From Macrostomum lignano (taxonomy: Eukaryota), in NCBI GenBank assembly GCA_002269645.1, contig NIVC01000691.1, positions 62,001 to 126,000 of the forward strand: DNA of 64,000 nt, given 5' to 3'. Below are positions 1 to 38,218 of this stretch, piece after piece; the first letter of the stretch is position 1, and each line of letters begins with the position of its first letter. Below the pieces are notes generated by a model that ran no database searches, was not told where the DNA came from, and was given only the letters and a program-made list of their open reading frames with translations. A program made the position numbers and the translations under genes.

Positions 1-943
1 GCTCTCTTTGCTGCAGCTCTCTCTGCTGTTGCTCTCTCTGCTGTTGCTCTCTCTGCTGTTGCTCTCTCTGCTGTTGCTCTCTCTGCTGTTTCTCTCTCTG
101 CTGTTGCTCTCTCTGCTGTTGCTCTCTCTGCTGTTGCTCTCTCTGCTGTTGCTCTCTCTGCTGTTGCTCTCTCTGCTGTTTCTCTCTCTGCTGCTGCTCT
201 CTCTGCCGTTGCTGAAGATTATTGAGATACCGTCTCTGCTGCTCATAAGAATCATTTGCTCTATCTTGACCTTGAAATTGACCTTGCTGATTTTTTACGT
301 CTAAAAGTGAATTCTGGTGCGCATTCTTATTGCTTTTAAAATCTTGGTCACTACCATTAGTATCTGTACGGCCAACACTGTGAGCAGCATTGCCAGGCTT
401 CTGATGAGCCGGTGCCCGAGAATCGAATGTTCCGCTCGATCCTCGATCAGACTCGCCAGGCGAAAGAGCTGACGAATAAGAAGCAGACTGAGCGGAACCA
501 CCAGGTACTGTCGGTTTAGCAACACCTGTGCCAGAGTTTGGCCAATTATTGTTGCTACCCGCAGGAGGACTGGCTTCCTTCAACTCAATCGGAGGTGCTC
601 CATCACTCTTGCCACAAACGCTGCATATCCTTCGCGTAGAATCCTCGTTGATGAAAGTGCAGAATTGGCACTGCCAGCCACCGCTGCTGCTAGAAGCAGG
701 TGGCGGAGATGTTGGTTGAGGCGGTGGCGGTCGTTTTGGCGGCGTGCGGCCTGACTGGGGAGATCGTGAAGGACCAGCGGCCGGCCCGGGCTGGTAGGGT
801 CTGGTCTGGTGATTTTTCCGATTCGGATGGTTGTGCCAAATCTGGTCGCAGCTTTTGCACAGCAGATTCCGGCTGCAGCCGGCTGTTTCGCACTGCACTT
901 CGGCTGGGTAATCGCCACAAAAGCTACAGTCTACTGTAGCCAT
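1..943 (-). CDS. HOIP/RNF31-family paralog, 5' part: B-box + NZF zinc finger + QQQRE repeat; runs off the left edge of the window
   Basis: Manual translation from ATG at 943: MATVDCSFCGDYPAEVQCETAGCSRNLLCKSCDQIWHNHPNRKNH (B-box) ... WQCQFCTFINEDSTRRICSVCGK (RanBP2/NZF) ... QQQRE repeats. No stop before position 1, so it is absent from the ORF track. Confidence 0.8.
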   Translation of the reverse strand, partial: MATVDCSFCGDYPAEVQCETAGCSRNLLCKSCDQIWHNHPNRKNHQTRPYQPGPAAGPSRSPQSGRTPPKRPPPPQPTSPPPASSSSGGWQCQFCTFINEDSTRRICSVCGKSDGAPPIELKEASPPAGSNNNWPNSGTGVAKPTVPGGSAQSASYSSALSPGESDRGSSGTFDSRAPAHQKPGNAAHSVGRTDTNGSDQDFKSNKNAHQNSLLDVKNQQGQFQGQDRANDSYEQQRRYLNNLQQRQREQQQREKQQREQQQREQQQREQQQREQQQREQQQREKQQREQQQREQQQREQQQREQQQRELQQRE

Positions 944-1173
944 ACTGCGCTCAGTGGGAGTATTGACTGCTTGGTTAATATTTGATTGACTTAAAAAAGG
1001 TTGGCTCTAAATAATCCCAGACTAAGCTATTTAGAACCAGATGAAACCTCGTTTGAAAGTTGTAAAACTGTGAGCCTTGGTGAACTTTTTTTACTGTCGT
1101 TACTATTTGAAATCATTATGGAGTCTCAAAAAATAACACCTCAGAACAATAAAATAACTAATATTTGATTAAA

Positions 1174-2123: not shown

Positions 2124-2438
2124 TCAAGACGGAGTATCAGCTTTGCCGCACAAGTTTAGCAACAGCAATGCAAAGAGCAGAACTGCTGGACCATTAAAAA
2201 TCCAGAATTCGATGTTAAAAAATCTGCGCGATGAAACTTCAGTGCTAGATGGACTTATAGAAACTTCAGACTGCTGCTGATGATAAGGTTCGGTCACGTG
2301 ATTTTTACGATTAGGGTGTCCGTGCCAGAGCGAGTCGCAGCTGCGGCACAGAATGTTGCGGCTGCAGGCGGGCGTACTGCAGTAGACGGCGGCTGGATTG
2401 TCGCCGCAGAAACTGCAGTCTACTATTGATGACGTCAT
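2124..2438 (-). CDS. Short B-box-only ORF related to the HOIP B-box (truncated paralog or first exon)
   Basis: MTSSIVDCSFCGDNPAAVYCSTPACSRNILCRSCDSLWHGHPNRKNH matches the B-boxes at 1-943 and 30601-34143; ATG at 2438. Confidence 0.55.
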   Translation of the reverse strand: MTSSIVDCSFCGDNPAAVYCSTPACSRNILCRSCDSLWHGHPNRKNHVTEPYHQQQSEVSISPSSTEVSSRRFFNIEFWIFNGPAVLLFALLLLNLCGKADTPS

Positions 2439-2542
2439 GGAGAGCAAGTGGAACTGGGCGACGAGAGTGGTCAGCATGAGAAAATATAAAATACTTTCTT
2501 CAATAATAATAGCTCGTAATAAAAAAATGATAACACATGTCT

Positions 2543-4117: not shown

Positions 4118-5719
4118 TTAAGACCGAAGCGGAACTTGGCGCACGATCAGTGCACGCAAAGCTGTCGCGTCTGTGGAAATACTACTCTGAACCTCAATTT
4201 TATGCCTTCTGCAAGTTTCCTTCAACTGCTCAACGTCCATCACCTCAACTGGATCCAAGCGATTCTTGTTGATCAGCGATACAAGGTACTCTTTGTAGTG
4301 CTTGCCGCACAGTTTTGCGTGACCCTCAACGGGTCTGCCGCAAGCTTCGTCAACCAGATTGCCACTCTCTTTCTGCTCCATCACATTGCAGGTACCAGAA
4401 GTGGCGCCTTCTGCAGCCGTCTCGTACTGAACCCCGTGGTCGCTGAGCAGCTTCTGAAGACTTCGCACAGTAAAGTCTCTCAGGTAGAACAGACAGTCTC
4501 TCGGATGCTCGCAGACGAGACCTCGACCGTGCAGTCTTTTGAAAAAGCCGCCGCAACCTGAGCAAAACTCTGCCCGACACGGCGGCCGGCAGGTGAAGTG
4601 CATGCACCCGCCCTTCGCCAGCGCGTATTTGAACTTGCACTTCGGACACTCGATGCCGTTGTTTTCTAGAAACGCTGCCACTCCCTTCGCTTGGTAGTCC
4701 GGATCATTCTCCACCAGCCACTGCTGGAACTGCTCGCAGCTGATTTTCTCGTGCTGCTCTCGCCACTGCTTGCGGCACTGCTTGCACGTGTACTTTGAGC
4801 ACTGGTTGCACTGGAACTTCAGACCCCGCATCTGCTCACTCAGTACAACTCCATTTGGACAGTGGCTGCACCACCGGAAATTCGGGTCCCGCATCAGGTT
4901 CCAATCGCGAAGCCTCTGCTCGAGCATGTTGATCTTGTCAGCCTCGAACCTGATCTCGGCATGCTGGAAGCTTTTCACCTGGATTAGCAGATACTCAAAA
5001 TAGTTCTCCAGCTCCGCTTCGTTCTCAGAGTCCGGTGTGTTACAGATCGGACACTGAAGATGAGACACATGATCGTTGTTGTCCAGACTGGCGGACACAA
5101 AGTTCCGGAAGCAGCTGAAGCACAACTTGCACTGGCAGGAGGCCATCTGGAGAACTTTATGCCTGGGAAAGCTATCAAAACAGATGGGACACTCGTTCTT
5201 GAAGTACGCACTCACAAAGTCCACGTAGTCAAGCTGGTCTCCGCAACTGCGAACAGCTTCGGCCAAATCGTTTGGATCGAAATCCCGGAACTCTGGCTGT
5301 TCGCGAAGCTTAATAAAGTTAGCCGAGTGTTCCAGTTTAGTGAAACTGAATCTTAACATCAAGTCTATCATCTCTTCGTTATTTTCATTGTCCTCATCAA
5401 CATCACTGAGTGACCGAGATGTTAAGCTTAGGAAGGACAGCTCAGACTGCAGCTGCTCTGATTCAGGCGGCGACTCTGACACAAAAAGCAGCCAAGAGCC
5501 GCAGGCGGAGCAATAGTGGCGGCTTCTTGGGTTGAGAAGAGTGCACCTGATGCACAGGTATTGACCAGTGCGCTGGTTTACATCAGTCACAATTTCCTTT
5601 AAGCTGTGACAGGATTCGCAAACTTTGCAGAAGATGCGTCCTTCGCTGACTGGCAGGCAGAAGGCGACAAACTCGTTGTTAAAAGTGCAAATCTTGCACT
5701 CCCAGTTGACGCAATCCAT
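4118..5719 (-). CDS. RNF31-like: HOIP/RNF31-like RBR E3 ligase, short form (2 NZF, RING1-IBR-RING2, LDD), 533 aa
   Basis: CPKCKFKYALAKGGCMHFTC (catalytic Cys/His), HPRDCLFYLRD and EQKE..DEACG..LCGKHYKEYLVSLIN..LDP closely match the human HOIP RING2-LDD. Confidence 0.9.
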   Translation of the reverse strand: MDCVNWECKICTFNNEFVAFCLPVSEGRIFCKVCESCHSLKEIVTDVNQRTGQYLCIRCTLLNPRSRHYCSACGSWLLFVSESPPESEQLQSELSFLSLTSRSLSDVDEDNENNEEMIDLMLRFSFTKLEHSANFIKLREQPEFRDFDPNDLAEAVRSCGDQLDYVDFVSAYFKNECPICFDSFPRHKVLQMASCQCKLCFSCFRNFVSASLDNNDHVSHLQCPICNTPDSENEAELENYFEYLLIQVKSFQHAEIRFEADKINMLEQRLRDWNLMRDPNFRWCSHCPNGVVLSEQMRGLKFQCNQCSKYTCKQCRKQWREQHEKISCEQFQQWLVENDPDYQAKGVAAFLENNGIECPKCKFKYALAKGGCMHFTCRPPCRAEFCSGCGGFFKRLHGRGLVCEHPRDCLFYLRDFTVRSLQKLLSDHGVQYETAAEGATSGTCNVMEQKESGNLVDEACGRPVEGHAKLCGKHYKEYLVSLINKNRLDPVEVMDVEQLKETCRRHKIEVQSSISTDATALRALIVRQVPLRS

Positions 5720-7933: not shown

Positions 7934-9835
7934 TCAACCCCAAATATCTAGGCCACTTTCAAAATCCACGTCATAAGAGTTGAACATCGACTCGGAGCCA
8001 CCGAAAGCGCCATCTGCACCCGATCCACCCTTCGAAGGCGTGGTTTTGCCGCACACAGTGCAAAGAACACGCAAACCATTGGAGACGCTGGGCGCAGTTG
8101 GAGACACGGCGGTGCAGTGCGGGCAGGTAAAGTCAACTGAAGTTGAAATCTCCGACAATGTGGGTGACAAATCGCGACGATTAAAATTAAGCTTCGGTTT
8201 ATTGTTTGACGAAAAAAAATCCAGTCGCATGGGACGCTGGGCGAGACCCGGGTTCAAACATTTCGATGGTGCCACTAGAGGCGCAGATGTAGGTCGCTGC
8301 GCTTTGCCCACCTTACTGCTCATAGGGCCAGCCAGAAAGTCCGGCGCACCTACACGGTCCTTCTTCTTGTTGCCACGCATGGCGCTGGCCAGGGCCTCCT
8401 TGAGGTGCGACTCGCACAGACCCGCCTCCACCACCGGCCTCCCGCACTCCCCGTCCTCCAGACCGCCTCCTGACGTCTCCTTCTGCTCCTGGACGCTGCA
8501 CCGACCTCCAGCGCCCGCCACTCCGACAAGCTCCAGCTCAACGCCCCGATCCAGCGCCGTCTGCCGAACCTTCTCCAACGGCCAGTCTCTGAACGTCTCC
8601 ACACACTCCGACCCGTGGTGGCAGTGCAGTCCCTTGTTCCCGCCGCAGCACTCCTGTCGAACAAACAGACTGCCGCAGTCGCTGCAGAACTCCGCCTTGC
8701 ACTGCCTGCACGTCAGGTGAAGACAGCCGCCTCGAGACAGCTCGAACTGGAAGCCGCACTTTGGACACGAGCTGCCCCGACTCTCCAGGAACTGCGCCAG
8801 TCCGCGCTCGCTCAAGTCCGTCTGCTGACGCCACTCGCCGAACTGCTGGCAGCTCACGCCTCGGTGCCGCTCGTGCCACGCCTTGCCGCACTTCCTGCAC
8901 GTCTCCTTGCCGCAGTGCGGACACCGCACCTGTCTGTCGTGGTGCTCCGACACCTCGAAACCGTTCGAGCACCCGCTGCACCAGCAGAAGTTGTCCGTCA
9001 GCTTCAGTCGCCAGTCGCGCAGTCTCTCATCCAGCTTCTTCATCACTACGGGCTTTAGCTTGCCCGCCAACAACCTCTGCAGCAGCGGAAAGTACTCGCA
9101 CGACGTGTCCGTCAGAGCTCGGTCGTCCAGCTTGTCGCACACCGGACACGTCAGCACCGACACCGAGCTGTCGTGCATCAGGCGCACCTCGATCTGCTGG
9201 CACAGACAGTCGCTGCAGACCTCGCAGCCGCACAGGGGAACCTCGACCAGCTTCTTGTCGTCGATGCACACTGGGCAATCTTTGCTAGCAGTAGTTTCCA
9301 TTGGAGCTGCTTTAGAGTTTCGAATAGAAATAGCTCTGAGCGGTCGAATTTGATCCCACTGCAGCACACCTTCAGTAGCCCTGTGAGTAGGGTAAAACGG
9401 CTTCAAACTCCTAGTGAAAATGTCATTCGCTTCTACAGCACCTGGGTCCCGCTCTTCGCCTATGCATCTTCGAAGACCCAATGTGCTGCTTGTCTCGCTC
9501 ATCCGGGTCCTCGAAAATCGCTGAGACATACTAATGCTCAAAGGTTCGGCTGCTGCATCCGTTTCGGCGTCTCGCAAACTCCACGAAGCACGGGATTCAT
9601 CGTCAAAGCTTTGCCTGTGCTGTTGGTTTTTACGAGGCTTTGGCTTGGGTGCCCGCTCAAGATGCTGTGCTCTCTGCTGTCGCTGGTGCAGATCCAGAAG
9701 CTCCTCACAAGAGACTGACTTGGAACACACGCTGCAGATGATGCGGCTTTTAGGATTTGAAGTGTCGCACATGGCCGAGTTGATAAATGTGCAGTGCTGG
9801 CACTGCCACTCAATGTTTTGGCTAGCTGATGCCAT
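7934..9835 (-). CDS. RNF31-like: HOIP-like RBR E3 ligase, divergent type B (NZF, RBR, truncated LDD, C-terminal NZF)
   Basis: First in-frame ATG at 9835 (MASASQNIEWQCQHCTFIN); CPVC-x-RING1, IBR, CPKCGFQFELSRGGCLHLTC, FRDW, VQEQKE..DGECG..LCESH; C-terminal FTCPHCT...LCTVCGK. Confidence 0.85.
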   Translation of the reverse strand: MASASQNIEWQCQHCTFINSAMCDTSNPKSRIICSVCSKSVSCEELLDLHQRQQRAQHLERAPKPKPRKNQQHRQSFDDESRASWSLRDAETDAAAEPLSISMSQRFSRTRMSETSSTLGLRRCIGEERDPGAVEANDIFTRSLKPFYPTHRATEGVLQWDQIRPLRAISIRNSKAAPMETTASKDCPVCIDDKKLVEVPLCGCEVCSDCLCQQIEVRLMHDSSVSVLTCPVCDKLDDRALTDTSCEYFPLLQRLLAGKLKPVVMKKLDERLRDWRLKLTDNFCWCSGCSNGFEVSEHHDRQVRCPHCGKETCRKCGKAWHERHRGVSCQQFGEWRQQTDLSERGLAQFLESRGSSCPKCGFQFELSRGGCLHLTCRQCKAEFCSDCGSLFVRQECCGGNKGLHCHHGSECVETFRDWPLEKVRQTALDRGVELELVGVAGAGGRCSVQEQKETSGGGLEDGECGRPVVEAGLCESHLKEALASAMRGNKKKDRVGAPDFLAGPMSSKVGKAQRPTSAPLVAPSKCLNPGLAQRPMRLDFFSSNNKPKLNFNRRDLSPTLSEISTSVDFTCPHCTAVSPTAPSVSNGLRVLCTVCGKTTPSKGGSGADGAFGGSESMFNSYDVDFESGLDIWG

Positions 9836-14800: not shown

Positions 14801-15126
14801 CTTCTCAGGTGCGCCAACAGAGCTACCACATCATCACAGGCCTTCTCGCAAGACTGGATGGAGTCAATGAGGTCAGTATCGGAGAAGTCCTTGAACTCCC
14901 TGAGCTGCTTCACTTCCTGGAGTCGCTCGGTCAGCCAGGTGTCGCAGCGACGCTGGGCCTGAGGCGGCGGCGGCAGCACCTCGACTCGGTGATTCTCAAC
15001 GCTGTGCCAGTTGGTGTGGCAGGACTCGCAGATCAGTTGGAAGCCGCAGCCGGCCTCCAGGCACCGGATTGAGGCGCCTGGGCGGCTGCAGATGAGGCAG
15101 CGCTCAGCAAACATTCGGTGAGCCAT
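11857..15126 (-). CDS. RNF31-like: HOIP-like RBR protein with duplicated UBA-like/RING1 unit, QRE coiled coil and substituted active site (predicted pseudo-ligase)
   Basis: ATG at 15126. Order: B-box-like, RING1 copy 1, QRE repeat, NZF, RING1 copy 2, IBR, RING2 (CPNC..SKSGYSVFHC), LDD (ICDRHYREYLIQLINANKLD). Confidence 0.85.
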   Translation of the reverse strand: MAHRMFAERCLICSRPGASIRCLEAGCGFQLICESCHTNWHSVENHRVEVLPPPPQAQRRCDTWLTERLQEVKQLREFKDFSDTDLIDSIQSCEKACDDVVALLAHLRSQCCQCSKQMPRHKLFHMATCECELCCGCFCSFLSGMPGQLECPVCGVAWSGDHVARNTTMILVYELESHLGNDEAARLLQMLEQQQSDQHQREQQEREEQLRDQLREQQEKEEQLREQLRDQLREQQEREEQLRDQLREQQEREEQLRYQLKEQQEREEQLRDQLREQQQREQQQREQQQKEQQQREQQQREKQLQREQQEREEQLRDQLRELQKTERKQREQQQREQQQREQQQREQQQREQQQKEQQQREQQQREKQLQREQQEREEQLRDQLRELQKTERKQREQQQRQQQQREQQQREQQQREQQQKEQQQREQQQREKQLQREQQEREEQLRDQLRELQKTEQQQREQQQREQQQRERKQREQQQREQQQREQQQREQQQREQQQREQQQREQQQREKQQEQNRQLHGHHTTNVLSNVTSQNFQENNSQSKGSWICNHCTLVNPAPSQPETGLGICSACTYITKLIGGATKGGAVARSEAAAAASMLTSAATSAASAAVGAAGSDSTEWSDKAQNLALQLRVENWVAERILVVKSMPKFKEFSESDLVVAIESCGDLAFEDDALMSQLRRKCNRCSNDLPRHKLVAMAVCECQMCPECFKKFLVDLKSSRIQCPACQGVCDDEDSRDFMKMQLMEMADVLGSDTVEYAVAHLEENSSKKSDEGWEVVEAAGKKGTKSKASKDASTVAVNTSNGYCPHRNGGLPKMDTRQCESYCKVCKQDVCKKCFGFWVDHQRINCSSYRDYAAGIQQKEDYNEMHTAAQKQGFSPTDANLHDQMMELLTFDLVCPNCSLCYQRVSKSGYSVFHCRCGHSFCPFCRSPQKRPHEGCPFKGFHVHHQRQCYFNLKQVKQTTFLDLLRGNKVKVSEACLNVGKACELPDLKMDGKLTVCPCTEKVTHNKPGICDRHYREYLIQLINANKLDLVDVANENELLEMFRRFRLALPQVKASNPSLSAAREKMKVYRERLKDMVPPLWGI
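13585..14530 (-). repeat. Coding QQQRE/QLRE tandem repeat with a 195-bp higher-order unit
   Basis: 15-bp GAGAGAGCAGCAGCA-type units; the marker ttctctctcctgttgctctctctgcagctg recurs at 13801, 13996 and 14191. Confidence 0.9.
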
Positions 15127-17388: not shown

Positions 17389-17728
17389 CTAACCTGCATC
17401 TACGGCACCATCAGTTGCTGCTAGATCGCGAACCTCCACCCTGAACGACCGGCCCATTGTTACATTGCCAAAGCCAAATGTTAACAAATGAACTCCCGGC
17501 ATTTTCGGAGTAAAACTGCAGAGGTATTTCACTTTGCCTTCGGAGGCTGCAATTCTGAATCGAACTGGCACTTGAGCACCGTCACTTTCAACGCCTTCCG
17601 GTACGAGACGGAAAAATGGTTGGCTTCCATCAACACCGATTTTTAGGATTAGAAGTGTCGCACATAGCCGAGTTGATAAATGTGCAGTGCTGGCATTGCC
17701 ACTCAAGATTTAGTCTAACGAATTCCAT
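17389..17728 (-). pseudogene. Half-NZF start copied from the 7934-9835 gene, joined to a filamin-type Ig repeat fragment with a 1-bp frameshift
   Basis: MEFVRLNLEWQCQHCTFINSAMCDTSNPK (ATG 17728, stop 17630), then in the next frame ...YLCSFTPKMPGVHLLTFGFGNVTMGRSFRVEV (filamin-like). Confidence 0.55.
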
Positions 17729-20272: not shown

Positions 20273-23200
20273 TCACTTTACAAGTGGCTGCTGCTGAGCA
20301 ATCAAAGCTCGCAGGGCTGCCACTTTGTTCTCGCCGACTCCCGAGCAGTCAATTCCTTCACGCAGACACGCTCCCCTGAGCTCGCCTTCGTCCATCACAC
20401 TGACGGGATCCAGCTTTTGCTTGTTCACCAGCGATACAAGGTACTCAATGTAGTGCTTCTCGCACAGGTTCGCCTGGCCCGGTTTCACGTCGACACCGCA
20501 CGGCTCATCCTTCAAACCGCTTCCAACTTCCTTTTGCTCCATCACTTCGCATTTGTCAACTGAGTTCTCAGCTTCGCTCTCGAACTCCACCTTGTGTAAA
20601 TTCAGCAGCAGCTGGAGCCGGTCCACTCCAAAGTCTCTTAGATAGAACAGACAGTCTCTCGGGTGTTTGCAACTCAGGCCCCTGCCCTGAATGATTGTAT
20701 ACTCGCCATCACAGCCTGCGCAGAATTGAAAGCGGCACATTCGGCAGGTGAAGTGCAGACAGCCACCCTTTGCTAAGGCATATTGAAAGCGACAATTAGG
20801 GCACTCAATGCCATTGGCTTGTAGAAAAAATCCAACACCTTTCTCCTGATATTCTGGATCATTGTATTTTAGCCAAATCTCAAACAGGTCACAGTCAATG
20901 TCCTCATGCTGATCTTTCCACGGCTTTTTGCACTCTTTGCAGGTAAAGGCCTGACAATTAGGACATTGGAACTTCAAGCCGATCATGATCTCTGCAAGTA
21001 AAATTTCAAAGCCACAGCTGCTGCACCTGCACCATCGATAGTTTGGATCTTGAAAAAAATTCCACTCTGTGATCTTCTTCTCGACAAGATCCAAAACGTT
21101 TTTATCAAATTTATATTCAGATTGTTTAAAGCGGATGTCATTGATCTGTTGCAGAAGCATTTTGAAATGGCTCTCCAGCTTTTCTATTTGATTTGGATCC
21201 GGAACTTGACAGATTGGGCAACAAAGATCTGTGACATGCCCGCCACCTGTCATAGCTGTTGTCACGAAGTTACGAAAGCACTCGTGGCACAACTCGCACT
21301 GACATGAAGCCATAGGCAATAACTTGTGTCTTGGAAACTCTCCACCACAGCAACTGCACTCGCACCCCAAGAAACTTTTCACGAAGTCAACGTAATCCCG
21401 CCTGTTATTGCTGCTCTTCGCAGCCTCCGCTAGGTCATAAAGATCGCGGCCCTTAAACTCGCTGTTTTGCATAAGCTGAAAAAGTATTTTAGCATCGCTA
21501 ATCTTTCTTAAGTCGAACTCTCCCATCAGACAGTGGAGGGAGGTCTCACTTTCATTCATTCTGTCGAACTTAGGTGGCTCCTGGCCCTCCTTGCGGAACA
21601 AAAATTGTGCGAAATCTCTAAAGACCCGTTCGTTTTCGGCTTGATAAAAATTAGTAAAATCACCATCGCCCTGAAAATCAAGGTTCACCTCATGGGCTGA
21701 CTGCAGCAACTCTGGGCAGTTCTCCGCAATCCAAGCGACCTTTGCTTTGTGACGCTGGGCGCAAATCTGAATAGCCGCTTCAAGGTCGCATGTGTTGTCC
21801 AGCACAGCAGATGCGATATCGTCAAATGAGGGTCGCACACCTGCATTATCATCCTGCAGCACTTTCGCTACCTCGCAACCGACCTGCTCAATCAGTGCCG
21901 GCCATTTTTCTGCGACCCAGACCTTGAATCCAGCCTCCGACTGGGCGCCATCATCAGCAGTTGCCACCAAATACAGCTGGCCCAGCCGACCATCGAAGCC
22001 AGAAAATTCGATATCTTGTATAAGCTTCATCAGCTGTCTGTTTGCAGCCGCCTCCATCTCTGGATTTCGCTGACGGGCTACTGGCTTGACCTCAAAGGGA
22101 AGCTTGATACCGTCACTGCCACCGAGTTCACGTGGAGTTTGGCAAATTGCGCAAGACTTTGCAGTAATGGGATTAAGCATTGTACATGCGGAGCAAGACC
22201 AATCTTGATCATTAGACAGCGGCTGTCTTACGGGTTGAAAAACTTTATTCAAATCATTGTCATAAAGCTGCTCCTCTTTCTGATGTTGCTCCCTCTGATG
22301 ATGCTCTCTCTCAAGTAGCTCTCTTTCACGCTCAATTAGCTCTATCTCACGCTCCTTATCACGCTCTCTCTCCCACTCTCTCTCACGTTGCTCTCTCTGC
22401 TGCTGCTCTCTCTGATTTTGATTTCTTTGCTTTTGCTCTCTCTGCTGCTGCTCCCTCTGGTGTTGCTTTCTCCCAAGTAGCTCTCTCTTACGCTCAAGTA
22501 GCTTTCTCTCACGCTCAATTAGCTCTCTTTCACGCTCAATTAGCTCTATCTCGCGCTCCTTATCACGCTCGCTCTCCCATTCTCTCTCCCGTTGCTCTCT
22601 CTGCTGCTGCTCTATCTCCCGTTGCTCTCTCTGCTGCTGCTCTCTCTGCTGCTGCTCTATCTCCCGTTGCTCTCTCTGCTGCTGCTCTCTCTGCTGCTGC
22701 TCTCTCTGCTGCTGCTCTCTCTTCTGCTGCTGCTCTCTCTTCTGCTGCTGCTCTCTCTTCTGCTGCTCTCTCTGCTGCTGCTCTCTCTCCCGTTGCTCTC
22801 TCTGCTGCTGCTCTCTCTCCCGTTGCTCTCTCTCCCGTTGCTCTCTCTGCTGCTGCTCTATCTCCCGTTGCTCTCTCTCCCGTTGCTCTCTCTGCTGCTG
22901 CTCTCTCTGCTGCTGCTCTCTCTGCTGCTGCTCTCTCTGCTGCTGCTCTCTCTGCTGCTGCTCTCTCTGCTGCTGCTCTCTCTGCTGCTGCTCTCTCTGC
23001 TGCTGCTCTCTCTTCTGCTGCTCTCTCTGCTGCTGCTCTCTCTGCTGCTGCTCTCTCTGCTGCTGCTCTCTCTGCTGCTGCTCTCTCTTCTGCTGCTCTC
23101 TCTGCTGCTCAAAAAAATCATTTGCTTTATTTAGAACTTCAAATTGACCTCGCTGATTCAAGTGCAAAAACAAATTCTGCTGCTCTCTCAGCTTCTTCTT

Positions 23201-24250
23201 GTTGCCTTGCATGGCGCTGACCAGGGCCTCTTTGAGGTGCGACTCGCACAGACCCGCCTTGACCACTGGCCTCCCGCACTCCCCGTCCTCCAGACCGCCT
23301 CCTGACGTCTCCTTCTGCTCCTGGACGCTGCACCGACCTCCAGTGCCCGCCACTCCGACAAGCTCCAGCTGAACGCCCCGCTCCAGCGCCGTCTGCCGAA
23401 CCTTCTCCAACGGCCAGTCTCTGAACGTCTCCACGCACTCCGACCCGTGGTGGCAGTGGAGTCCCTTGTTACCGCCGCAGCACTCCTGTCGAACAAACAG
23501 ACTGCCGCAGTCGCTGCAGAACTCCGCCTTGCACTGCCTGCACGTCAGGTGAAGACAGCCGCCTCGAGACAGCTCGAACTGGAAGCCGCACTTTGGACAC
23601 GAGCTGCCCCGACTCTCCAGGAACTGCGCCAGTCCGCGCTCGCTCAAGTCCGTCTGCTGACGCCACTCGCCGAACTTCTGGCAGCTCACGCCTCGGTGCC
23701 GCTCGTGCCACGCCTTGCCGCACTTCCTGCACGTCTCCTTGCCGCAGTGCGGGCACCGCACCTGCCTGTCGTGGTGCTCCGACACCTCGAAACCGTTCGA
23801 GCACCCGCTGCACCAGCAGAAGTTGTCCGTCAGCTTCAGTCGCCAGTCGCGCAGTCTCTCATCAAGCTTCTTCATCACTGCGGGCTTCAGCTGGCCCGCC
23901 AGCAGCCTCCGAAGCAGCGGAAAGTACTCGCACGACGTGTCCGTCAGAGCTCGGTCGTCCAGCTTGTCGCACACCGGACACGTCAGCACCGACACCGAGC
24001 TGTCGTTCATCAGGCGCACCTCGATCTGCTGGCACAGACAGTCGCTGCAGACCTCGCAGCCGCACAGGGGAACCTCGACCAGCTTCTTCTCGTCGATGCA
24101 CACCGGGCACTCTGCTGATGTCTGCAGCTCTGAGAGGTCAGTGGATTTTCCGCACACTGAGCAGATCAGCCTTCTGTGCAGTTGGCGACTCAGTGCTACA
24201 TTATTGATGAAGGCACAACACGGACACTGCCACTGCGATAGGCGTGGCAT
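20273..24250 (-). CDS. RNF31-like: Chimeric double-RBR HOIP-like E3 ligase, 1325 aa (NZF, type-B RBR, QRE coil, NZF, UBA, type-A RBR-LDD)
   Basis: Single ORF with two complete RING1-IBR-RING2 units: FELSRGGCLHLTC and YALAKGGCLHFTC...HPRDCLFYLRD...LCEKHYIEYLVSLVN..LDP. Confidence 0.88.
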   Translation of the reverse strand: MPRLSQWQCPCCAFINNVALSRQLHRRLICSVCGKSTDLSELQTSAECPVCIDEKKLVEVPLCGCEVCSDCLCQQIEVRLMNDSSVSVLTCPVCDKLDDRALTDTSCEYFPLLRRLLAGQLKPAVMKKLDERLRDWRLKLTDNFCWCSGCSNGFEVSEHHDRQVRCPHCGKETCRKCGKAWHERHRGVSCQKFGEWRQQTDLSERGLAQFLESRGSSCPKCGFQFELSRGGCLHLTCRQCKAEFCSDCGSLFVRQECCGGNKGLHCHHGSECVETFRDWPLEKVRQTALERGVQLELVGVAGTGGRCSVQEQKETSGGGLEDGECGRPVVKAGLCESHLKEALVSAMQGNKKKLREQQNLFLHLNQRGQFEVLNKANDFFEQQREQQKREQQQREQQQREQQQREQQQREQQKREQQQREQQQREQQQREQQQREQQQREQQQREQQQREQQQREQREREQREIEQQQREQREREQREREQQQREQREREQQQREQQKREQQQKREQQQKREQQQREQQQREQQQREQREIEQQQREQQQREQREIEQQQREQREREWESERDKEREIELIERERELIERERKLLERKRELLGRKQHQREQQQREQKQRNQNQREQQQREQREREWERERDKEREIELIERERELLEREHHQREQHQKEEQLYDNDLNKVFQPVRQPLSNDQDWSCSACTMLNPITAKSCAICQTPRELGGSDGIKLPFEVKPVARQRNPEMEAAANRQLMKLIQDIEFSGFDGRLGQLYLVATADDGAQSEAGFKVWVAEKWPALIEQVGCEVAKVLQDDNAGVRPSFDDIASAVLDNTCDLEAAIQICAQRHKAKVAWIAENCPELLQSAHEVNLDFQGDGDFTNFYQAENERVFRDFAQFLFRKEGQEPPKFDRMNESETSLHCLMGEFDLRKISDAKILFQLMQNSEFKGRDLYDLAEAAKSSNNRRDYVDFVKSFLGCECSCCGGEFPRHKLLPMASCQCELCHECFRNFVTTAMTGGGHVTDLCCPICQVPDPNQIEKLESHFKMLLQQINDIRFKQSEYKFDKNVLDLVEKKITEWNFFQDPNYRWCRCSSCGFEILLAEIMIGLKFQCPNCQAFTCKECKKPWKDQHEDIDCDLFEIWLKYNDPEYQEKGVGFFLQANGIECPNCRFQYALAKGGCLHFTCRMCRFQFCAGCDGEYTIIQGRGLSCKHPRDCLFYLRDFGVDRLQLLLNLHKVEFESEAENSVDKCEVMEQKEVGSGLKDEPCGVDVKPGQANLCEKHYIEYLVSLVNKQKLDPVSVMDEGELRGACLREGIDCSGVGENKVAALRALIAQQQPLVK
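22290..23110 (-). repeat. Coding QQQRE/ERE repeat
   Basis: Runs of ctctctctgctgctg on the plus strand, inside ORF 20273-24250. Confidence 0.9.
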
Positions 24251-28133: not shown

Positions 28134-28292
28134 CTGGAATAATATCACAGTATTTTTAACAATGTGTACCAGCTTCTATAATAATACTTTCCTAATTCCA
28201 TCGTATATGCCCTTTTCTGAGAAAACTTCTAACGTCAACTGAAGTGTACAACTTATTTATTTAATATCTAAAGTTGGTTTCTTAACAATTTA

Positions 28293-30600: not shown

Positions 30601-33600
30601 TTAATTTTGTGCCCCAAGCGGAACATTTGCTACAATCATATCTCGAAGAGCATCTAGACTATTTGCGGGTACTCCCGAGCAATCGATTCCATGACGGTTG
30701 CACACTGCTCGCAATTCGTTTTCCTCCATCACGCTAACGGGATCCAGCCTTTTTCTGTTAATCAGCGCTACAAGGTATTCAATGTAGTGCTTTTCGCACA
30801 GGTTTGCCTGACCAGGATTAACTTTGGCTCCACAGGCTTCGTCGGACAAGGTGTCTTTCTGCATCATTAATTGACACTCTTCGACAGCTGGTTCAATATC
30901 CTTCTTAAACTCTACTTCGTGAGACAGCAGTAGCTGCTGCAATCGATTCACACCATAGTCTCTTATGTAGTACAGACAGTCTCTCGGATGTTTACATGCT
31001 AAGCCCTTACCTGACTTATCAGTAAAGAATTCTCCTTTGCAGCCAGCACAGAATTGAAATTTACACTTTCTGCACGTAAAGTGTTCACATCCACCCTTTG
31101 AAAGCTCGTACTGATACCGACAATTCGGACACTGAATACCGTTTTCCCTTAGAAAAGATGCTACTTCTTCTTCCTGATACTTTGGATCATTGTCTTGAAG
31201 CCATTGCTCGAATTGATCACAGCTAAGCTCTTCGTGCTGATCCCTCCAGGGCTTGTTGCAGTCTTTGCAAGAATGTTTGTGGCACTCGGGGCACTGATAT
31301 TTTTTGCCAAGAATTATATCTGGAAGCATCAGTCCGGTGCGGCACTGGCTGCACCAGCGAAAGTTATCATCGAGATAAAGATTCCACTCAGCGATTTTAT
31401 TCTCAATGAGATCCACATCCTGTTTCTCAAATCGCACCGTATCGTGGTGAAAGTTTCGAATCTGATCCAAAAGAGTGGCGAAATGACTTTGCAGCTCTTC
31501 GGTTTGATTGGCATTCGGCTTGGTACAGTATGGGCAGTGAAGCTCTGTGACATGCCTGTTGTTTCGAATCACGGAACAAACAAACATGTGAAAACACTCA
31601 TGGCAAAACTCACATTGGCAAGAAGCCATTAACAGCAGTTTATGCTTTGGATATGGTTCAAAACAGGACTTGCATTCATAACTGAAGTACTTTTGCACTG
31701 ATTCAACATCAAAGCAGTTCTTAGCAGCTTCAGCAAGGTCTTTAATGTCGTAGCATTTCAGCATGTCGATGCAAAGAAAGTTTCTAAATCTCTCTGCATC
31801 TTCGATTTTTCTTATGTCAAACTCTCCCATCAGACAGTAAAAGGAAGCTTTGCTAGTGTTCATCTGCCGAAATTTAGGCTCCTCAGTTCCTTCCTTAGAA
31901 AATAAAAACTTGGCAAAGTCATTGAATGCGCGCTGATTTTCCATTTCAAATAAGTTAGTCTGATCGCCTTGCATATCAAGGTTTACCTCATGGGGTGACT
32001 GCAGCAATTCCGGGCAATTTTCGGCAATCCAAGCGACCTTTGCTACGTGACGCTGGGCGCACAGCTGGATAGCCGCTTCAAGATCGCATGTGTTGTCTAA
32101 AACAGCAGATGCGATTTCGTCAAATGAGGGTCGCAATATCACATCAGCCACACCTGCATGAGTATCCTGCAATACTTTTGCAACTTCGCAACCGACCTGC
32201 TCAATCAGTGCCGGCCATTTTTCTGCTACCCAGGCCTTGAATCCAGCCTCCGACTGGGCGCCATCATCAGCAGTTGCCACCAAATACAGCTGGCCCAGCC
32301 GACCATCGAAGCCAGAAAATTCGATATCTTGTATAAGCTTCATCAGCTGTCTGTTTGCAGCCGCCTCCATCTCTGGATTTCGCTGACGGGCTACTGGCTT
32401 GACCTCAAAGGGAAGCTTGATACCGTCACTGCCACCGAGTTCGCGTGGAGTTTGGCAAATTGCGCAAGACTTTGCAGTAATGGGATTAAGCATTGTACAT
32501 GCGGAGCAAGACCAATCTTGTTCATTGGACAGCGGTTCTTGTTTAGGCTTCAGTGGTGCGCGATCTGGAATCTCCACCTGCTTTGGAGCTTCTGGCTGTT
32601 TTACTGCTGGCTCCTGCTGCTGTTTTTTGACCTTTGCAATAATTTCCTTATCGTCGCAAGTCATCGAACAAACTGAGCATATGACGCGGCTACTTTTTAT
32701 TAGCTTCGTCTCGGCTATAGGATTTAGCGCCGTACAAACGGGGCAAGGCCAACTGTTCGCTTCCGTTGGTTCGGTAGGCACCGGCCTTGGAGGCAACTGC
32801 TGCTGCGGAGGGGGTGGAGCTGTCTCAGGTTTCGGCACAATTGATTTAGACAGACGTGGCTTGGGCTTCGGTATCGATTGTGGCTGTTGAGGCGGTTGCG
32901 GTGGCTGCGGAGCTGGCAGCGATGGCTGCGGAGGTAGCTGATCTGAGCAGTCAAAAAACTCTTCTTCAGGCGTCGGCGGTCGACGAATGTCGCCAGCTGG
33001 CTTCGAAAAGCTGCGCTCCTCGCTAATAGGCTTTAACGACATCATGAACTCATTGAGTTTCATTACACGGGCATCTGACTCGCTGGTATCGCTAGGCTGC
33101 TGTCGCGGTGGCTGCTGTGGCTGTTGTTGAGGTAAAACATATCGCGGTTTTTGTCCAGGATACTGCGGCGGTGGAACCCTCGGAGGCGGCACAGCAACAG
33201 CAGGTGCAGCAGCAGCAGCAGCAGCAACAGGCGCAGGTTGCTGCTGCTGTTGAGCTAGATTTGGACTATTATTACCCATGAGACCAAGTTGAGACTTATA
33301 ACTAACCGCTTGACTGTTTGACACAACCTTTCTAACTCCAGAGTTCAACTGCACACTGGCAGGTCCCACCACGCCCGGTGGCAGCAACCGCACAGCGTTG
33401 GATCCGACGGCGTCGCTGATTTTTCGTCGATTATGACTGCGCCGGTCCGGATGCCCGTGCCAGCGTCCGTCGCAACTCTCGCACAGGCGCCGCTTGGAGC
33501 AGTGCTTCTCCTGGCAGGCCACCGTTGCCGCGGCCTCGCCGCACAGGTCGCAATTCTGGTTGAGTTTGCGCTGCATTGCGTTTACTCTATCCTGCATTCC

Positions 33601-34143
33601 GGAGGGTCCGGCACGCCTAAGAGCTGGCTGTTCGTTCTTGGCGATAAGCTTAGCACCCAACGGATGGTTATCCTTAATGATGAGGCTCAGCTCTTCAGCC
33701 AGCAGGTACAAGTCTACAAGAGTATCAGCAAGGGCTTCGTTCGACAATCGTTCAGATGTAATGGTGAAATTCTGATCGTTGCGCTCGAAACCAATGCGTT
33801 CTAATAGTTGGTCAACGCCCGAGAGGCACTGGCAGAATGAGGCCTGCACCCTGTGCCAATCCGGTGGTCGGTCTCTCTCTGGACGCAGCAGGTGCTTGAG
33901 CTTGTTGCGCAGAAATAAACAGGACCGCTTGACGTCTTCGGCTGATTTTTTGTCACCCGACATGGCGGCGCGAGCATCCACTAGCTTGTACTTTTGGTTG
34001 ATCTGCATTTGCAGCAGTTCGCCATAGTCTAGCTGGCGACTATCTCGGATGGCCTCAAGCAGGTTAGATCTGGCATTGCGAACTGAAACATCGCCAAGAC
34101 CTCCGGAGTTCGGAATCGGGGGCAACGGCCTCGATTGGGCCAT
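30601..34143 (-). CDS. RNF31: HOIP/RNF31 orthologue-like, full architecture: PUB, B-box, 2 NZF, UBA, RBR, LDD (1180 aa)
   Basis: N-terminal PUB-like (WHRVQASF...LLERIGF), B-box CDLC..LCESCDGRWHGHPDRRSH, NZFs, UBA-like helices, YELSKGGCEHFTC, HPRDCLYYIRD, LCEKHYIEYLVALINRKRLDP. Confidence 0.9.
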   Translation of the reverse strand: MAQSRPLPPIPNSGGLGDVSVRNARSNLLEAIRDSRQLDYGELLQMQINQKYKLVDARAAMSGDKKSAEDVKRSCLFLRNKLKHLLRPERDRPPDWHRVQASFCQCLSGVDQLLERIGFERNDQNFTITSERLSNEALADTLVDLYLLAEELSLIIKDNHPLGAKLIAKNEQPALRRAGPSGMQDRVNAMQRKLNQNCDLCGEAAATVACQEKHCSKRRLCESCDGRWHGHPDRRSHNRRKISDAVGSNAVRLLPPGVVGPASVQLNSGVRKVVSNSQAVSYKSQLGLMGNNSPNLAQQQQQPAPVAAAAAAAPAVAVPPPRVPPPQYPGQKPRYVLPQQQPQQPPRQQPSDTSESDARVMKLNEFMMSLKPISEERSFSKPAGDIRRPPTPEEEFFDCSDQLPPQPSLPAPQPPQPPQQPQSIPKPKPRLSKSIVPKPETAPPPPQQQLPPRPVPTEPTEANSWPCPVCTALNPIAETKLIKSSRVICSVCSMTCDDKEIIAKVKKQQQEPAVKQPEAPKQVEIPDRAPLKPKQEPLSNEQDWSCSACTMLNPITAKSCAICQTPRELGGSDGIKLPFEVKPVARQRNPEMEAAANRQLMKLIQDIEFSGFDGRLGQLYLVATADDGAQSEAGFKAWVAEKWPALIEQVGCEVAKVLQDTHAGVADVILRPSFDEIASAVLDNTCDLEAAIQLCAQRHVAKVAWIAENCPELLQSPHEVNLDMQGDQTNLFEMENQRAFNDFAKFLFSKEGTEEPKFRQMNTSKASFYCLMGEFDIRKIEDAERFRNFLCIDMLKCYDIKDLAEAAKNCFDVESVQKYFSYECKSCFEPYPKHKLLLMASCQCEFCHECFHMFVCSVIRNNRHVTELHCPYCTKPNANQTEELQSHFATLLDQIRNFHHDTVRFEKQDVDLIENKIAEWNLYLDDNFRWCSQCRTGLMLPDIILGKKYQCPECHKHSCKDCNKPWRDQHEELSCDQFEQWLQDNDPKYQEEEVASFLRENGIQCPNCRYQYELSKGGCEHFTCRKCKFQFCAGCKGEFFTDKSGKGLACKHPRDCLYYIRDYGVNRLQQLLLSHEVEFKKDIEPAVEECQLMMQKDTLSDEACGAKVNPGQANLCEKHYIEYLVALINRKRLDPVSVMEENELRAVCNRHGIDCSGVPANSLDALRDMIVANVPLGAQN

Positions 34144-37968: not shown

Positions 37969-38218
<250 letters not shown>

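What the first reader, a model, noticed from the sequence alone, without database searches (positions are those of the whole stretch)
1..34143. Tandem, diversified HOIP (linear-ubiquitin ligase) gene cluster
Seen: six long minus-strand ORFs carry seven RBR modules with HOIP-specific RING2-LDD motifs, plus three partial relatives, in 34 kb; the cluster continues off the left edge. Known: HOIP/RNF31 (Drosophila LUBEL) is the RBR that builds Met1-linked ubiquitin chains and is typically single-copy. Inference: this is a birth-and-death expansion with domain shuffling, as seen in immune gene families, and may amount to a multi-component system of active, dead, unregulated and double ligases.
Basis: partly seen in the sequence, partly recalled or inferred. 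Interest (0 to 1): 0.88.

Follow-up and report, generated by a model that had tools for sequence, protein, structure and literature searches.

The report
Expanded, reshuffled HOIP ubiquitin-ligase gene array
A flatworm (Macrostomum lignano) carries a tandem array of about ten genes derived from HOIP, the enzyme that builds head-to-tail ubiquitin chains and is usually present in one or two copies, and the copies have been recombined into apparently active, catalytically dead and double-enzyme forms.

Summary
Window 1-34143 holds six uninterrupted minus-strand ORFs (533-1325 aa) with seven RING1-IBR-RING2-LDD modules. Each aligns end to end with human HOIP RBR-LDD. There are also three partial relatives. 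The array runs 11.8 kb further left, giving about ten genes in about 46 kb.

The genome is M. lignano Mlig_3_7. Its three known subgenomes each carry a collinear copy of the array with different gene content. A second locus holds an intron-bearing HOIP plus degenerate neighbours.

The modules fall into three classes.
- **A (g1, g4b, g6):** catalytic Cys/His, Arg935/Asp936 and a full helical base, but all four ZF1 zinc ligands are deleted.
- **B (g2, g4a, g5):** catalytic residues and ZF1 kept, but the helical base is truncated.
- **C (g3, left-edge gene):** catalytic Cys/His and Arg/Asp replaced, so dead.

g4 fuses a B and an A module. g6 and g4 are recombinant mosaics. dN/dS between subgenome copies is 0.15-0.53. 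All M. lignano modules form one clade among animal HOIPs.

I conclude this is a real, lineage-specific, birth-and-death HOIP family. Chain type, partners and biological role (immune or proliferating-cell/germline) are untested. I found no description of it in the literature.

The parts
2..943 (-). g-1, 5' part (314 codons) of a 982-aa gene that ends at window -2005. It has a B-box-like Zn finger, an NZF, a QQQRE repeat and an NZF, followed by a class C (dead) RBR-LDD that lies left of the window.
   Evidence: ORF. ANCHR-like B-box at 17.8 bits. PF18091 at 37.5 bits in the left part. Catalytic Cys->Val and His->Val.
2280..2429 (-). Relic of a B-box-like zinc-finger exon (partial relative).
   Evidence: tblastn: 68% identity to g-1 residues 2-51, E 5e-19. 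It lies outside any long ORF.
4118..5719 (-). g1, 533 aa: NZF, NZF-like, then class A RBR-LDD (module 4121-5197; catalytic Cys codon about 4604-4606). It has no UBA and no PUB. It is the most conserved member.
   Evidence: PF18091 84.7 bits, IBR_1 57.7 bits. 43% identity to human HOIP RBR-LDD, E 1.5e-93. dN/dS 0.15 between subgenome copies.
7934..9835 (-). g2, 633 aa: NZF, class B RBR-LDD (module 8276-9286), then a tail with an NZF-like finger.
   Evidence: Pfam. PDB RNF31 6e-53. Residue table. Helical base stops aligning near human residue 1012.
11857..15126 (-). g3, 1089 aa: B-box-like finger, a lone RING1, a QQQRE repeat (15-bp coding microsatellite at 13586-14553), an NZF, and a class C dead RBR-LDD (module 11860-13080).
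   Evidence: PDB RNF31 3.5e-20. Cys885->Tyr, His887->Val, Arg935->Lys, Asp936->Gln, IBR Cys802->Arg. 100% identical to NCBI M. lignano BOX15_Mlig011956g1. dN/dS 0.40.
17645..17710 (-). Relic of an NZF finger (partial relative).
   Evidence: tblastn: 95% identity to g2 residues 7-28, E 2e-9.
20273..24250 (-). g4, 1325 aa, the double ligase: NZF, class B RBR-LDD (23111-24115), QQQRE repeat (22581-23109), NZF, UBA (about 21719-22039), class A RBR-LDD (20276-21364).
   Evidence: Two PF18091 and two IBR_1 stretches. UBA_HOIP 28.2 bits. The 5' part is 97% nt identical to g2. The 3' half is 88-98% aa identical to the g6-like gene of contig C110.
25899..28133 (-). g5, about 745 aa: NZF, class B RBR-LDD (26814-27848), and an MQSMNS-type repeat tail (27-bp coding repeat at 25984-26522). 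There is no in-frame ATG before the NZF and RING1. A 3' splice acceptor (AG at 28135-28134) opens the frame.
   Evidence: Pfam. The open frame and acceptor are conserved in all three subgenome copies. The M. lignano spliced leader ends in ATG (PMC8629364). A start codon donated by trans-splicing is my inference.
30601..34143 (-). g6, 1180 aa, full HOIP architecture: PUB-like N-terminus (33559-34143), B-box-like Zn finger, two NZFs, UBA, class A RBR-LDD (30604-31680).
   Evidence: PF18091 77.7 bits, UBA_HOIP 23.7 bits, RanBP finger. PDB RNF31 7e-69. N-terminus vs an annelid HOIP carrying Pfam PUB: BLASTP 5e-5. Mosaic: residues 1-700 are 95-100% identical to the copies on C762/C110, while the RBR-LDD is only 50-68% identical with saturated dS.

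Best explanation
Window 1-34143 is the larger part of a roughly 46-kb head-to-tail array of about ten genes. All descend from the flatworm's HOIP/RNF31 gene. The genome is Macrostomum lignano (assembly Mlig_3_7).

The array arose in this lineage by tandem duplication. It keeps turning over through unequal recombination or gene conversion between paralogues, which produces mosaic genes. It also changes through expansion of in-frame microsatellites and occasional disruption. All sampled copies remain under purifying selection.

Proposed mechanism, inferred from residues:
- **Classes A and B are working RBR ligases.** RING1 binds E2~ubiquitin. Ubiquitin passes to the RING2 cysteine (the Cys885 equivalent, with the His887 equivalent as base). 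The LDD, with the Arg935/Asp936 equivalents, presents an acceptor.
- **The NZF fingers** recruit the enzymes to existing ubiquitin chains.
- **The two acceptor-positioning parts of the LDD are split between classes.** A has the helical base but not the ZF1 zinc finger. B has ZF1 but a truncated base. Linkage or acceptor specificity has therefore probably diverged. Only A is a strong candidate for Met1-linked chain synthesis.
- **Class C proteins are pseudo-ligases.** They keep the fold, most zinc ligands and the NZFs. They most likely act as non-catalytic ubiquitin-binding partners or regulators.
- **g4** joins a B and an A module in one chain.

Shown here: homology, residue states, array structure, mosaicism and selection. 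Inferred: enzymatic activity, chain type, partner roles and biological process.
For: - g3 is 100% identical to an NCBI M. lignano protein on a 476,613-bp contig.
- **Family.** PF18091, IBR and UBA_HOIP hits. End-to-end alignment to human HOIP RBR-LDD.
- **Residue states** are. Their meaning comes from PMC5413910 (ZF1 plus helical base position the acceptor) and PMC7125101 (Arg935/Asp936 contact the acceptor ubiquitin and are essential).
- **ZF1 loss is rare.** The ligands are kept in about 145 of 152 other animal HOIP representatives.
- **Lineage-specific clade.** IQ-TREE support 93/88 with 10 other animal HOIPs. FastTree support 0.954 with 150 representatives.
- **Three collinear copies with 8, 11 and 7 modules**, consistent with the published S/L1/L2 subgenomes.
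- **Mosaics.** g6 residues 1-700 have dS 0.05-0.07, against pS 0.74-0.75 for its RBR-LDD. g4 is g2-like at the 5' end and g6-like at the 3' end.
- **Selection.** dN/dS is 0.15-0.53 for all genes, including the dead class C at 0.40-0.47. ORFs of 533-1325 aa are intact.
- **Some family member is transcribed.** A transcript whose best hit is RNF31 appears in differential-expression gene lists of two M. lignano RNA-seq studies.
Against: - There are no activity data for any member.
- Loss of ZF1 in class A, and in the intron-bearing locus-2 gene, may impair Met1 specificity.
- dN/dS of 0.4-0.55 for B and C is only moderately constrained and was measured over short divergences.
- Expression could not be assigned to individual paralogues.
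- One left-hand gene is split on two of the three subgenome copies and some copies on C762 are truncated, so part of the array is decaying.
- One long-branch annelid sequence falls inside the M. lignano clade in the large FastTree, with support 0.0.
Confidence: 0.72

Rival explanations
1. The array is an innate-immune arms-race family. It would be diversified by pathogen pressure, as NLR-like or TRIM-like families are, and its members would be induced by infection or wounding.
For: - HOIP/LUBEL acts in NF-kB-type immunity in mammals, flies and shrimp (papers listed).
- Copy-number turnover and mosaicism are seen here.
- An RNF31-best-hit transcript is differentially expressed with age, together with TRAF1, BIRC2/3 and TAX1BP1 homologues.
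Against: - Every pairwise dN/dS is below 1. Site-specific tests were not possible.
- The same best-hit label also appears in a proliferating-cell gene list.
- No infection data exist.
- OTULIN and the SHARPIN PH domain were not detected, and UBAN was only sub-threshold.
Confidence: 0.3
2. The family serves proliferating cells, the germline or reproduction, as proposed for the ARI1 RBR expansion in Caenorhabditis, rather than immunity.
For: - An RNF31-best-hit transcript sits in a 1,870-gene list whose enriched terms are ribosome biogenesis, DNA recombination and telomere maintenance. That is one of the proliferating-cell lists of PMC5173321.
- There is a precedent for a lineage-specific RBR expansion tied to the germline (PMC6288150).
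Against: - The paralogue behind the label is unknown.
- Nothing was found in the supplements of the Macrostomum reproduction-gene study.
Confidence: 0.25
3. The copies are largely redundant by-products of a repeat-rich neopolyploid genome and are drifting toward pseudogenes. Only the intron-bearing locus-2 gene, and perhaps g1, would be functional.
For: - One gene is split on two subgenome copies, and there are truncated type C and B copies on C762.
- dN/dS is relaxed at 0.4-0.55 for B and C.
- Two relics lie in the window.
Against: - Uninterrupted ORFs of up to 1325 aa are kept in parallel on three subgenomes.
- dN/dS is clearly below 1 even for dead class C.
- Nearly all zinc ligands are retained.
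- Classes A, B and C are ancient (saturated dS), so they have survived far longer than neutral decay would allow.
Confidence: 0.15
4. The cluster is an assembly artefact, made by concatenating haplotigs or homeologues in tandem.
For: - Mlig_3_7 is redundant, and 36% of its length is in chimeric scaffolds.
- g2/g4a (97% nt) and g3/g-1 (89% nt) are similar enough to raise the question.
Against: - The same C-A-B-C-B...A order recurs on three separate scaffolds with their own flanks.
- Most neighbours within a scaffold differ at saturated synonymous distance and belong to different classes.
- Subgenome divergence is only about 2%, far less than the distances between paralogues.
Confidence: 0.03

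Closest known systems
Human/vertebrate HOIP (RNF31), catalytic subunit of LUBAC
   Same: g6 has the same domain order: PUB-like, B-box-like finger, NZFs, UBA, RING1-IBR-RING2-LDD. Classes A and B keep the catalytic Cys885/His887 and Arg935/Asp936. The RBR-LDD is 34-43% identical.
   Different: - About ten tandem paralogues instead of one or two genes.
- Long uninterrupted ORFs.
- ZF1 ligands deleted in class A, helical base truncated in class B, active site destroyed in class C.
- A double-RBR fusion (g4).
- The PUB motif around human N102 is not conserved.
- No SHARPIN PH or OTULIN detected in the genome.
Drosophila LUBEL (CG11321) and crustacean LUBEL
   Same: These are invertebrate HOIP orthologues whose RBR-LDD makes Met1 chains without HOIL-1 or SHARPIN (papers listed; PMC5413910). 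That is a plausible model for how the flatworm enzymes could work alone.
   Different: LUBEL is a single, very long gene (2892 aa) that retains ZF1. The flatworm has many short and mosaic genes, dead copies and ZF1 loss.
ARI1-family RBR expansion in Caenorhabditis (PMC6288150)
   Same: A recent lineage-specific expansion of one RBR subfamily (abstract).
   Different: It is a different RBR subfamily (Ariadne, no LDD). I do not know of dead or double modules reported there.
Second RNF31-like/'lubel'-like paralogue of fishes, sharks and frogs
   Same: It shows that HOIP-type RBR-LDD genes can duplicate and take on new N-terminal domains (UEV and others).
   Different: One extra copy, not a tandem array. 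The catalytic features were not examined here.

Membership tests
HOIP/RNF31 (RBR-LDD ligases) | RING1-IBR-RING2 with the conserved zinc ligands | tested here: met
   All Cys/His ligands of RING1, IBR and RING2 are conserved in classes A and B. Class C lacks only the IBR Cys802 equivalent. IBR and IBR_1 Pfam hits are above cut-off in five of the six ORFs.
HOIP/RNF31 (RBR-LDD ligases) | Catalytic Cys885 and His887 in RING2 | tested here: met
   Present in g1, g4b, g6 (A) and g2, g4a, g5 (B). Not met in g3 and g-1 (C), which have Tyr/Val and Val. Class C is therefore a HOIP-derived pseudo-ligase, not a ligase.
HOIP/RNF31 (RBR-LDD ligases) | LDD helical base (Pfam PF18091), found only in HOIP | tested here: met
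   Class A scores 78-113 bits over the full model. Class B scores 27-29 bits over model positions about 25-75 only, so it is truncated. Class C scores 37-43 bits. The cut-off is 23 bits.
HOIP/RNF31 (RBR-LDD ligases) | ZF1 zinc finger inserted in RING2 (ligands at human 911, 916, 923, 925) | tested here: not met
   Class A and the locus-2 gene have a 9-10-residue deletion that removes all four ligands. Classes B and C keep Cys/His at these positions. About 145 of 152 other animal HOIPs keep them. My assignment of these four residues to one zinc site is an inference from the pattern and from PMC5413910.
HOIP/RNF31 (RBR-LDD ligases) | Acceptor-ubiquitin contacts Arg935/Asp936 | tested here: met
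   Arg-Asp in classes A and B. Lys-Gln in class C. Their role is taken from PMC7125101.
HOIP/RNF31 (RBR-LDD ligases) | N-terminal PUB, zinc finger, NZF and UBA modules | tested here: met
   g6 has UBA_HOIP at 23.7 bits, a RanBP/NZF finger and a B-box-like finger. PUB is weak: hhalign E 0.0018 against fish HOIP and BLASTP 5e-5 against an annelid HOIP with Pfam PUB. The AF2 model was poor (pLDDT 57) and the fold search empty. The other genes carry subsets of these modules.
HOIP/RNF31 (RBR-LDD ligases) | Closer to HOIP than to any other RBR family | tested here: met
   PDB searches give RNF31 at 7e-69, 6e-53 and 3.5e-20 for A, B and C, against ARIH2 at about 1e-4 or no hit. All modules fall among animal HOIPs in the trees. 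An explicit tree with non-HOIP outgroups was not built.
HOIP/RNF31 (RBR-LDD ligases) | Synthesis of Met1-linked ubiquitin chains | not testable with these tools
   This needs in vitro assays.
LUBAC-type complex (HOIP with HOIL-1, SHARPIN; OTULIN as eraser) | SHARPIN PH domain and OTULIN (Peptidase_C101) encoded in the genome | tested here: inconclusive
   The six-frame scan of G000 gave no match for PF16764 or PF16218. The tool's controls gave no positive either, and exon-wise search can miss divergent genes.
LUBAC-type complex (HOIP with HOIL-1, SHARPIN; OTULIN as eraser) | HOIL-1/RBCK1 partner present | not tested
   No specific family model or verified query sequence was on hand, and further genome sequence could not be fetched.
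LUBAC-type complex (HOIP with HOIL-1, SHARPIN; OTULIN as eraser) | UBAN-type Met1-chain reader (CC2-LZ) | tested here: inconclusive
   PF16516 scores 32.8 bits on three contigs, below the 35.3-bit cut-off.

The most novel reading that the evidence does not exclude
The flatworm may have split HOIP's chain-determining machinery among paralogues: ZF1-less A, base-truncated B and dead C. It has re-joined two of them in the B+A fusion g4. If so, the family could write ubiquitin linkages or modify acceptors other than Met1 of ubiquitin. The class C pseudo-HOIPs and the RING1-only proteins could have taken over the activator or scaffold roles that HOIL-1 and SHARPIN play in LUBAC. That would make this a self-contained, HOIP-only multi-subunit ubiquitin-writing system.
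Probability: 0.15. Interest if true: 0.85.

Novelty: new variant of a known kind. Interest (0 to 1): 0.62.

Why it matters
HOIP is the only known ligase that makes linear ubiquitin chains. Its specificity is attributed to two LDD elements, ZF1 and the helical base.

This array is a natural mutagenesis series of exactly those elements. It contains enzymes without ZF1, enzymes without the end of the base, fold-preserving dead copies and a tandem double enzyme. All have been kept by selection in one animal that can be made transgenic and knocked down by RNAi. Testing them would show directly which elements are needed for Met1 specificity, and whether RBR pseudo-ligases regulate active relatives.

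It also shows that a signalling enzyme thought of as near single-copy can undergo birth-and-death evolution.

If the copies turn out to be redundant, the finding is merely an unusually large gene-family expansion in a neopolyploid genome.

Tried and rejected
- **PUB domain by sequence.** Pfam, and a PDB profile search with the N-terminus of g6 plus the locus-2 gene, found nothing.
- **PUB domain by structure.** AlphaFold2 on an 8-sequence alignment gave pLDDT 57, and Foldseek against the PDB gave no match below E 0.2. PUB now rests only on weak sequence comparisons.
- **Expression by exact protein look-up.** The g1 product is not on record, because records of the window's genome are left out.
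- **Expression by homologue search.** Searches returned no near-identical transcript-derived proteins.
- **Supplements of two further Macrostomum RNA-seq papers** held no RNF31 entry.
- **My first reading of 'HPRDC' as Arg935/Asp936 was wrong.** Numbering from Cys885 puts Arg935/Asp936 in 'YLRDW', so class B is not acceptor-site-dead.
- **Retrogene origin from the intron-bearing locus-2 gene.** This is not supported as stated. That gene nests inside class A as sister to g6/g4b, with g1 outside. Intron loss versus gain remains open.
- **P0258 as a flatworm relative.** It is from the annelid Branchiobdella kobayashii, and its position in the tree has no support.
Full report
**Where the window comes from.** The window is G000:C691:62001-126000, in a 764,410,778-base assembly of 5,269 contigs. 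Size and scaffold number match the Macrostomum lignano DV1 assembly Mlig_3_7. That assembly is given as 764,424,962 bases in 5,270 scaffolds (PMC5730564) and as 5,269 scaffolds in PMC10733133. One of the window's own products is 100% identical to NCBI 'hypothetical protein BOX15_Mlig011956g1 [Macrostomum lignano]', on a contig of 476,613 bases, which is the length of C691. The organism is therefore a free-living flatworm.

**The observation.** Six long uninterrupted minus-strand ORFs lie between 4118 and 34143. I call them g1 (4118-5719), g2 (7934-9835), g3 (11857-15126), g4 (20273-24250), g5 (25899-28148) and g6 (30601-34143).
- Pfam finds the HOIP-specific C-terminal domain PF18091 (the LDD) with IBR/IBR_1 in g1, g2, g4 (twice), g5 and g6. 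It also finds UBA_HOIP and a RanBP/NZF finger in g6.
- g3 escaped Pfam at protein level. It is found by the six-frame PF18091 scan at 43 bits.
- BLASTP of human HOIP RBR-LDD gives end-to-end alignments to seven modules: g1 1.5e-93, g4b 2.7e-81, g6 4.2e-73, g2 6e-56, g5 5e-55, g4a 2e-54 and g3 1.4e-22. The human sequence was read from the 5EDV alignment.
- Three partial relatives exist. They are the first 314 codons of another gene at 2-943, a B-box-finger relic at 2280-2429 and an NZF relic at 17645-17710.
- To the left, the 2-943 ORF continues into a 982-aa gene (g-1). Three more HOIP-derived ORFs follow, down to window -11.8 kb. Cys-loop channel genes come after that.
- To the right of 34143 there are only tandem repeats and a C2H2 zinc-finger gene.

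**Family assignment.** In the PDB sequence search the best hits of g6, g2 and the g3 module are all RNF31/HOIP, at 7e-69, 6e-53 and 3.5e-20. The next family, ARIH2, reaches only about 1e-4, and nothing else appears for g3. An exhaustive HMMER search with the g1 module finds 167 cluster representatives below 1e-30. Those I looked up are HOIP/RNF31/LUBEL proteins of sponges, cnidarians, molluscs, annelids, arthropods, tardigrades and vertebrates.

**Three module classes.** I aligned the modules to human HOIP and numbered from Cys885 in GGCMHF.
- **Class A (g1, g4b, g6).** It keeps all RING1, IBR and RING2 ligands, Cys885, His887, Arg935, Asp936 and a full-length helical base. A 9-10-residue deletion removes the residues at human positions 911, 916, 923 and 925.
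- **Class B (g2, g4a, g5).** It keeps Cys885, His887, Arg935, Asp936 and Cys/His at those four positions. It has Phe888Leu. It stops aligning near human residue 1012, so the last part of the helical base is missing.
- **Class C (g3, g-1).** It has Tyr or Val for Cys885, Val for His887, Lys-Gln for Arg935-Asp936, and has lost one IBR cysteine. It cannot form the thioester.

PMC5413910 states that the LDD is a zinc finger (ZF1) integrated into RING2 plus a helical base, and that both are needed to position the acceptor ubiquitin. PMC7125101 states that Arg935 and Asp936 contact the acceptor ubiquitin and that alanine mutants lose linear activity. That the four deleted positions are the ZF1 ligands is my inference. 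It rests on their clean joint loss while the flanking His926 and Cys930 remain. Among 152 other animal HOIP sequences about 145 keep Cys911, His923 and His925. Apart from M. lignano's own locus-2 proteins and one fragment, only two others lack them.

An earlier reading of mine, that class B had lost Arg935/Asp936, was a numbering error and is withdrawn.

**Architectures.**
- **g6** has the full HOIP order: a PUB-like N-terminus, a B-box-like finger, two NZFs, UBA and RBR-LDD.
- The PUB assignment is weak. It rests on hhalign E 0.0018 against fish HOIP. It also rests on BLASTP 5e-5 against the N-terminus of an annelid HOIP whose product carries Pfam PUB. The AlphaFold model was poor and the fold search empty. 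The segment around human Asn102 is absent from the alignment.
- **g1** is NZF, NZF-like, RBR-LDD, with no UBA.
- **g4** is NZF, B module, QQQRE repeat, NZF, UBA, A module.
- **g3 and g-1** combine a B-box-like finger, NZFs, QQQRE repeats and the dead module. g3 also has a lone RING1.
- In human HOIP the isolated RBR-LDD is active without HOIL-1 or SHARPIN, and the N-terminal part including the UBA restrains it (PMC3463842). Calling g1 'unregulated' is a reasonable inference, not a result.

**Copies elsewhere in the genome.** PF18091 gives 32 matches on six contigs.
- Three contigs (C691, C762, C110) carry collinear versions of this array at 85-96% nucleotide identity, flanks included.
- The other three contigs carry a second locus. 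It holds a HOIP gene with at least four introns (UniRef A0A1I8H8R9 is its gene model) followed by degenerate relatives, one of them also dead at the active site.
- M. lignano DV1 is known to hold three homeologous subgenomes, S, L1 and L2, that differ by about 2% in SNPs (PMC10733133). Triplication of each locus is therefore expected, and the genome-wide count must be divided by three.
- The three arrays are not equal. C691 has 8 modules, C762 has 11 and C110 has 7. The double ligase is on C691 and C762 only. C762 has truncated class C copies.
- One left-hand gene is a single 1049-aa ORF on C762 but is split within its peptide repeat on C691 and C110.
- The arrays are also far more diverged than the 2% genome average.

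**Mosaic genes.**
- g6 is 95-100% identical in protein to the g6-like genes of C762 and C110 over residues 1-700 (dS 0.05-0.07). It drops to 50-68% over the RBR-LDD, where synonymous sites are saturated (pS 0.74-0.75). An old, otherwise unsampled class A module has been grafted onto a young 5' half.
- g4 is 97% identical in DNA to g2 at its 5' end. It carries a QQQRE repeat like that of g3. Its 3' half is 88-98% identical in protein to the g6-like gene of C110.
- This is direct evidence of domain shuffling by recombination between paralogues.

**Selection and age.** Between subgenome copies dN/dS is 0.15 for g1, 0.32-0.39 for g2, 0.43-0.53 for g5, 0.30-0.33 for g6, 0.39 for g4 and 0.40-0.47 for the dead g3 and g-1. 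Within the window, the three class A lineages and the three classes are separated by saturated synonymous distances. g2/g4a (dS 0.14) and g3/g-1 (dS 0.17) are recent duplicates. Old classes that still have open frames of about 1000 codons on three subgenomes are not neutral debris.

**Phylogeny.**
- IQ-TREE on 35 modules puts all M. lignano modules in one clade (support 93/88), apart from human, gar, Nematostella, four molluscs, a tubeworm and two mites.
- Classes B (100/100) and C (100/98) are each monophyletic on long stems.
- The intron-bearing locus-2 gene nests inside class A, as sister to g6/g4b, with g1 outside.
- A FastTree with 150 database representatives gives the same clade (0.954). 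One long-branch annelid sequence (Branchiobdella kobayashii) is attached with zero support.
- The expansion is therefore specific to this lineage. A simple 'retrocopies of the locus-2 gene' story does not fit the tree, although M. lignano genes average 4.9 introns and these ORFs have none.

**Partners.** Six-frame scans of the genome found no SHARPIN PH domain and no OTULIN. CC2-LZ/UBAN matches were sub-threshold only (32.8 bits against a cut-off of 35.3). These negatives are weak. HOIL-1 was not tested.

**Expression.** Direct look-ups failed because records of this genome are masked.
- A transcript whose best human hit is RNF31 is in a 1,870-gene list of PMC5173321. That list is enriched for ribosome biogenesis, DNA recombination and telomere maintenance, so it is one of the paper's proliferating-cell lists.
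- Such a transcript is also in an age-dependent list of PMC5946080, together with TRAF1, BIRC2/3 and TAX1BP1 homologues.
- At least one family member is therefore transcribed. Which one is unknown.

**Literature.** Full-text searches for Macrostomum with RNF31, for HOIP/LUBAC with flatworms, and for RBR/HOIP/LUBEL expansion found no description of this family. Public records call the proteins 'hypothetical' or 'IBR domain-containing'.

**Verdict.** This is a real, lineage-specific, tandem HOIP family that evolves by duplication, recombination and loss. It has probably active (A, B), dead (C) and fused (g4) forms. Membership in the HOIP family is met on every sequence criterion except ZF1 in class A and the active site in class C. 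Whether any member makes linear chains, and what the family does in the animal, remain to be tested. Interest is moderate to high, because the variants fall exactly on the elements held responsible for linear-chain specificity.

Noticed in passing
window 28100-28175 (minus strand); the same site on C762 and C110: g5 has no in-frame ATG ahead of its NZF and RING1 in any of the three copies. The frame opens exactly after a polypyrimidine-AG acceptor (tattattccag|GCC ACA). The M. lignano spliced leader ends in ...TTGCATG (PMC8629364). Trans-splicing here would therefore donate an in-frame start codon, giving M-A-T-S-S.
   Followed up: partly
window 1-213, 13586-14553, 22581-23109, 25984-26522: In-frame coding microsatellites. 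A 15-bp unit encodes QQQRE runs in g-1, g3 and g4, and a 27-bp unit encodes MQSMNS-type repeats in g5. Their length differs between subgenome copies. They also create long spurious plus-strand ORFs such as 13404-14870 and 25993-26529.
   Followed up: partly
left of the window, C691:50167-52299 and 52318-53169 (window -11833..-8831): Two adjacent ORFs of 710 and 283 aa are one intact 1049-aa ORF on C762. They are split at different points of a RERDSGQPM peptide repeat on C691 and C110. This is either decay in progress or long-read indel errors in a repeat. These proteins have a B-box-like finger, NZFs and two RING1-like motifs, but no recognisable RING2-LDD.
   Followed up: partly
window 37971-51584 and 57493-63994: The right half of the window is dominated by simple and tandem repeats. 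Examples are (CTAT)x515 at 41007-43068 and 21-23-bp units at 39794-40520, 47017-48122 and 63061-63994. They produce strong GC skew and several long meaningless ORFs. The only Pfam-supported gene there is a C2H2 zinc-finger ORF at 43673-45508 (+).
   Followed up: partly
G000:C1573:235-256 kb (also C1037 and C1484): The second HOIP locus is itself a small tandem array. It holds an intron-bearing full-length gene that also lacks ZF1 and has HPRSC in place of HPRDC. A 712-aa relative with Cys885->Ala follows, then two further B-box/IBR remnants. An Ariadne-domain gene lies 21-34 kb away on two of the contigs.
   Followed up: partly
P0259 / P0113 (Ephydatia muelleri, sponge): A sponge protein shows four tandem RING1-IBR units when aligned to the g1 module. 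Multi-module HOIP-like proteins are therefore not confined to the flatworm.
   Followed up: no
P0258 (Logan contig SRR8799326_30631, Branchiobdella kobayashii) and P0257: Two other animal HOIP representatives also lack the ZF1 ligands. ZF1 loss may therefore have happened more than once in fast-evolving lineages.
   Followed up: no
one search hit list: Many fishes, sharks and Xenopus have a second RNF31-like/'lubel' gene whose RBR-LDD is joined to UEV and other domains (PF05743, PF07292, PF23085, PF23222). HOIP is therefore not strictly single-copy in vertebrates.
   Followed up: no
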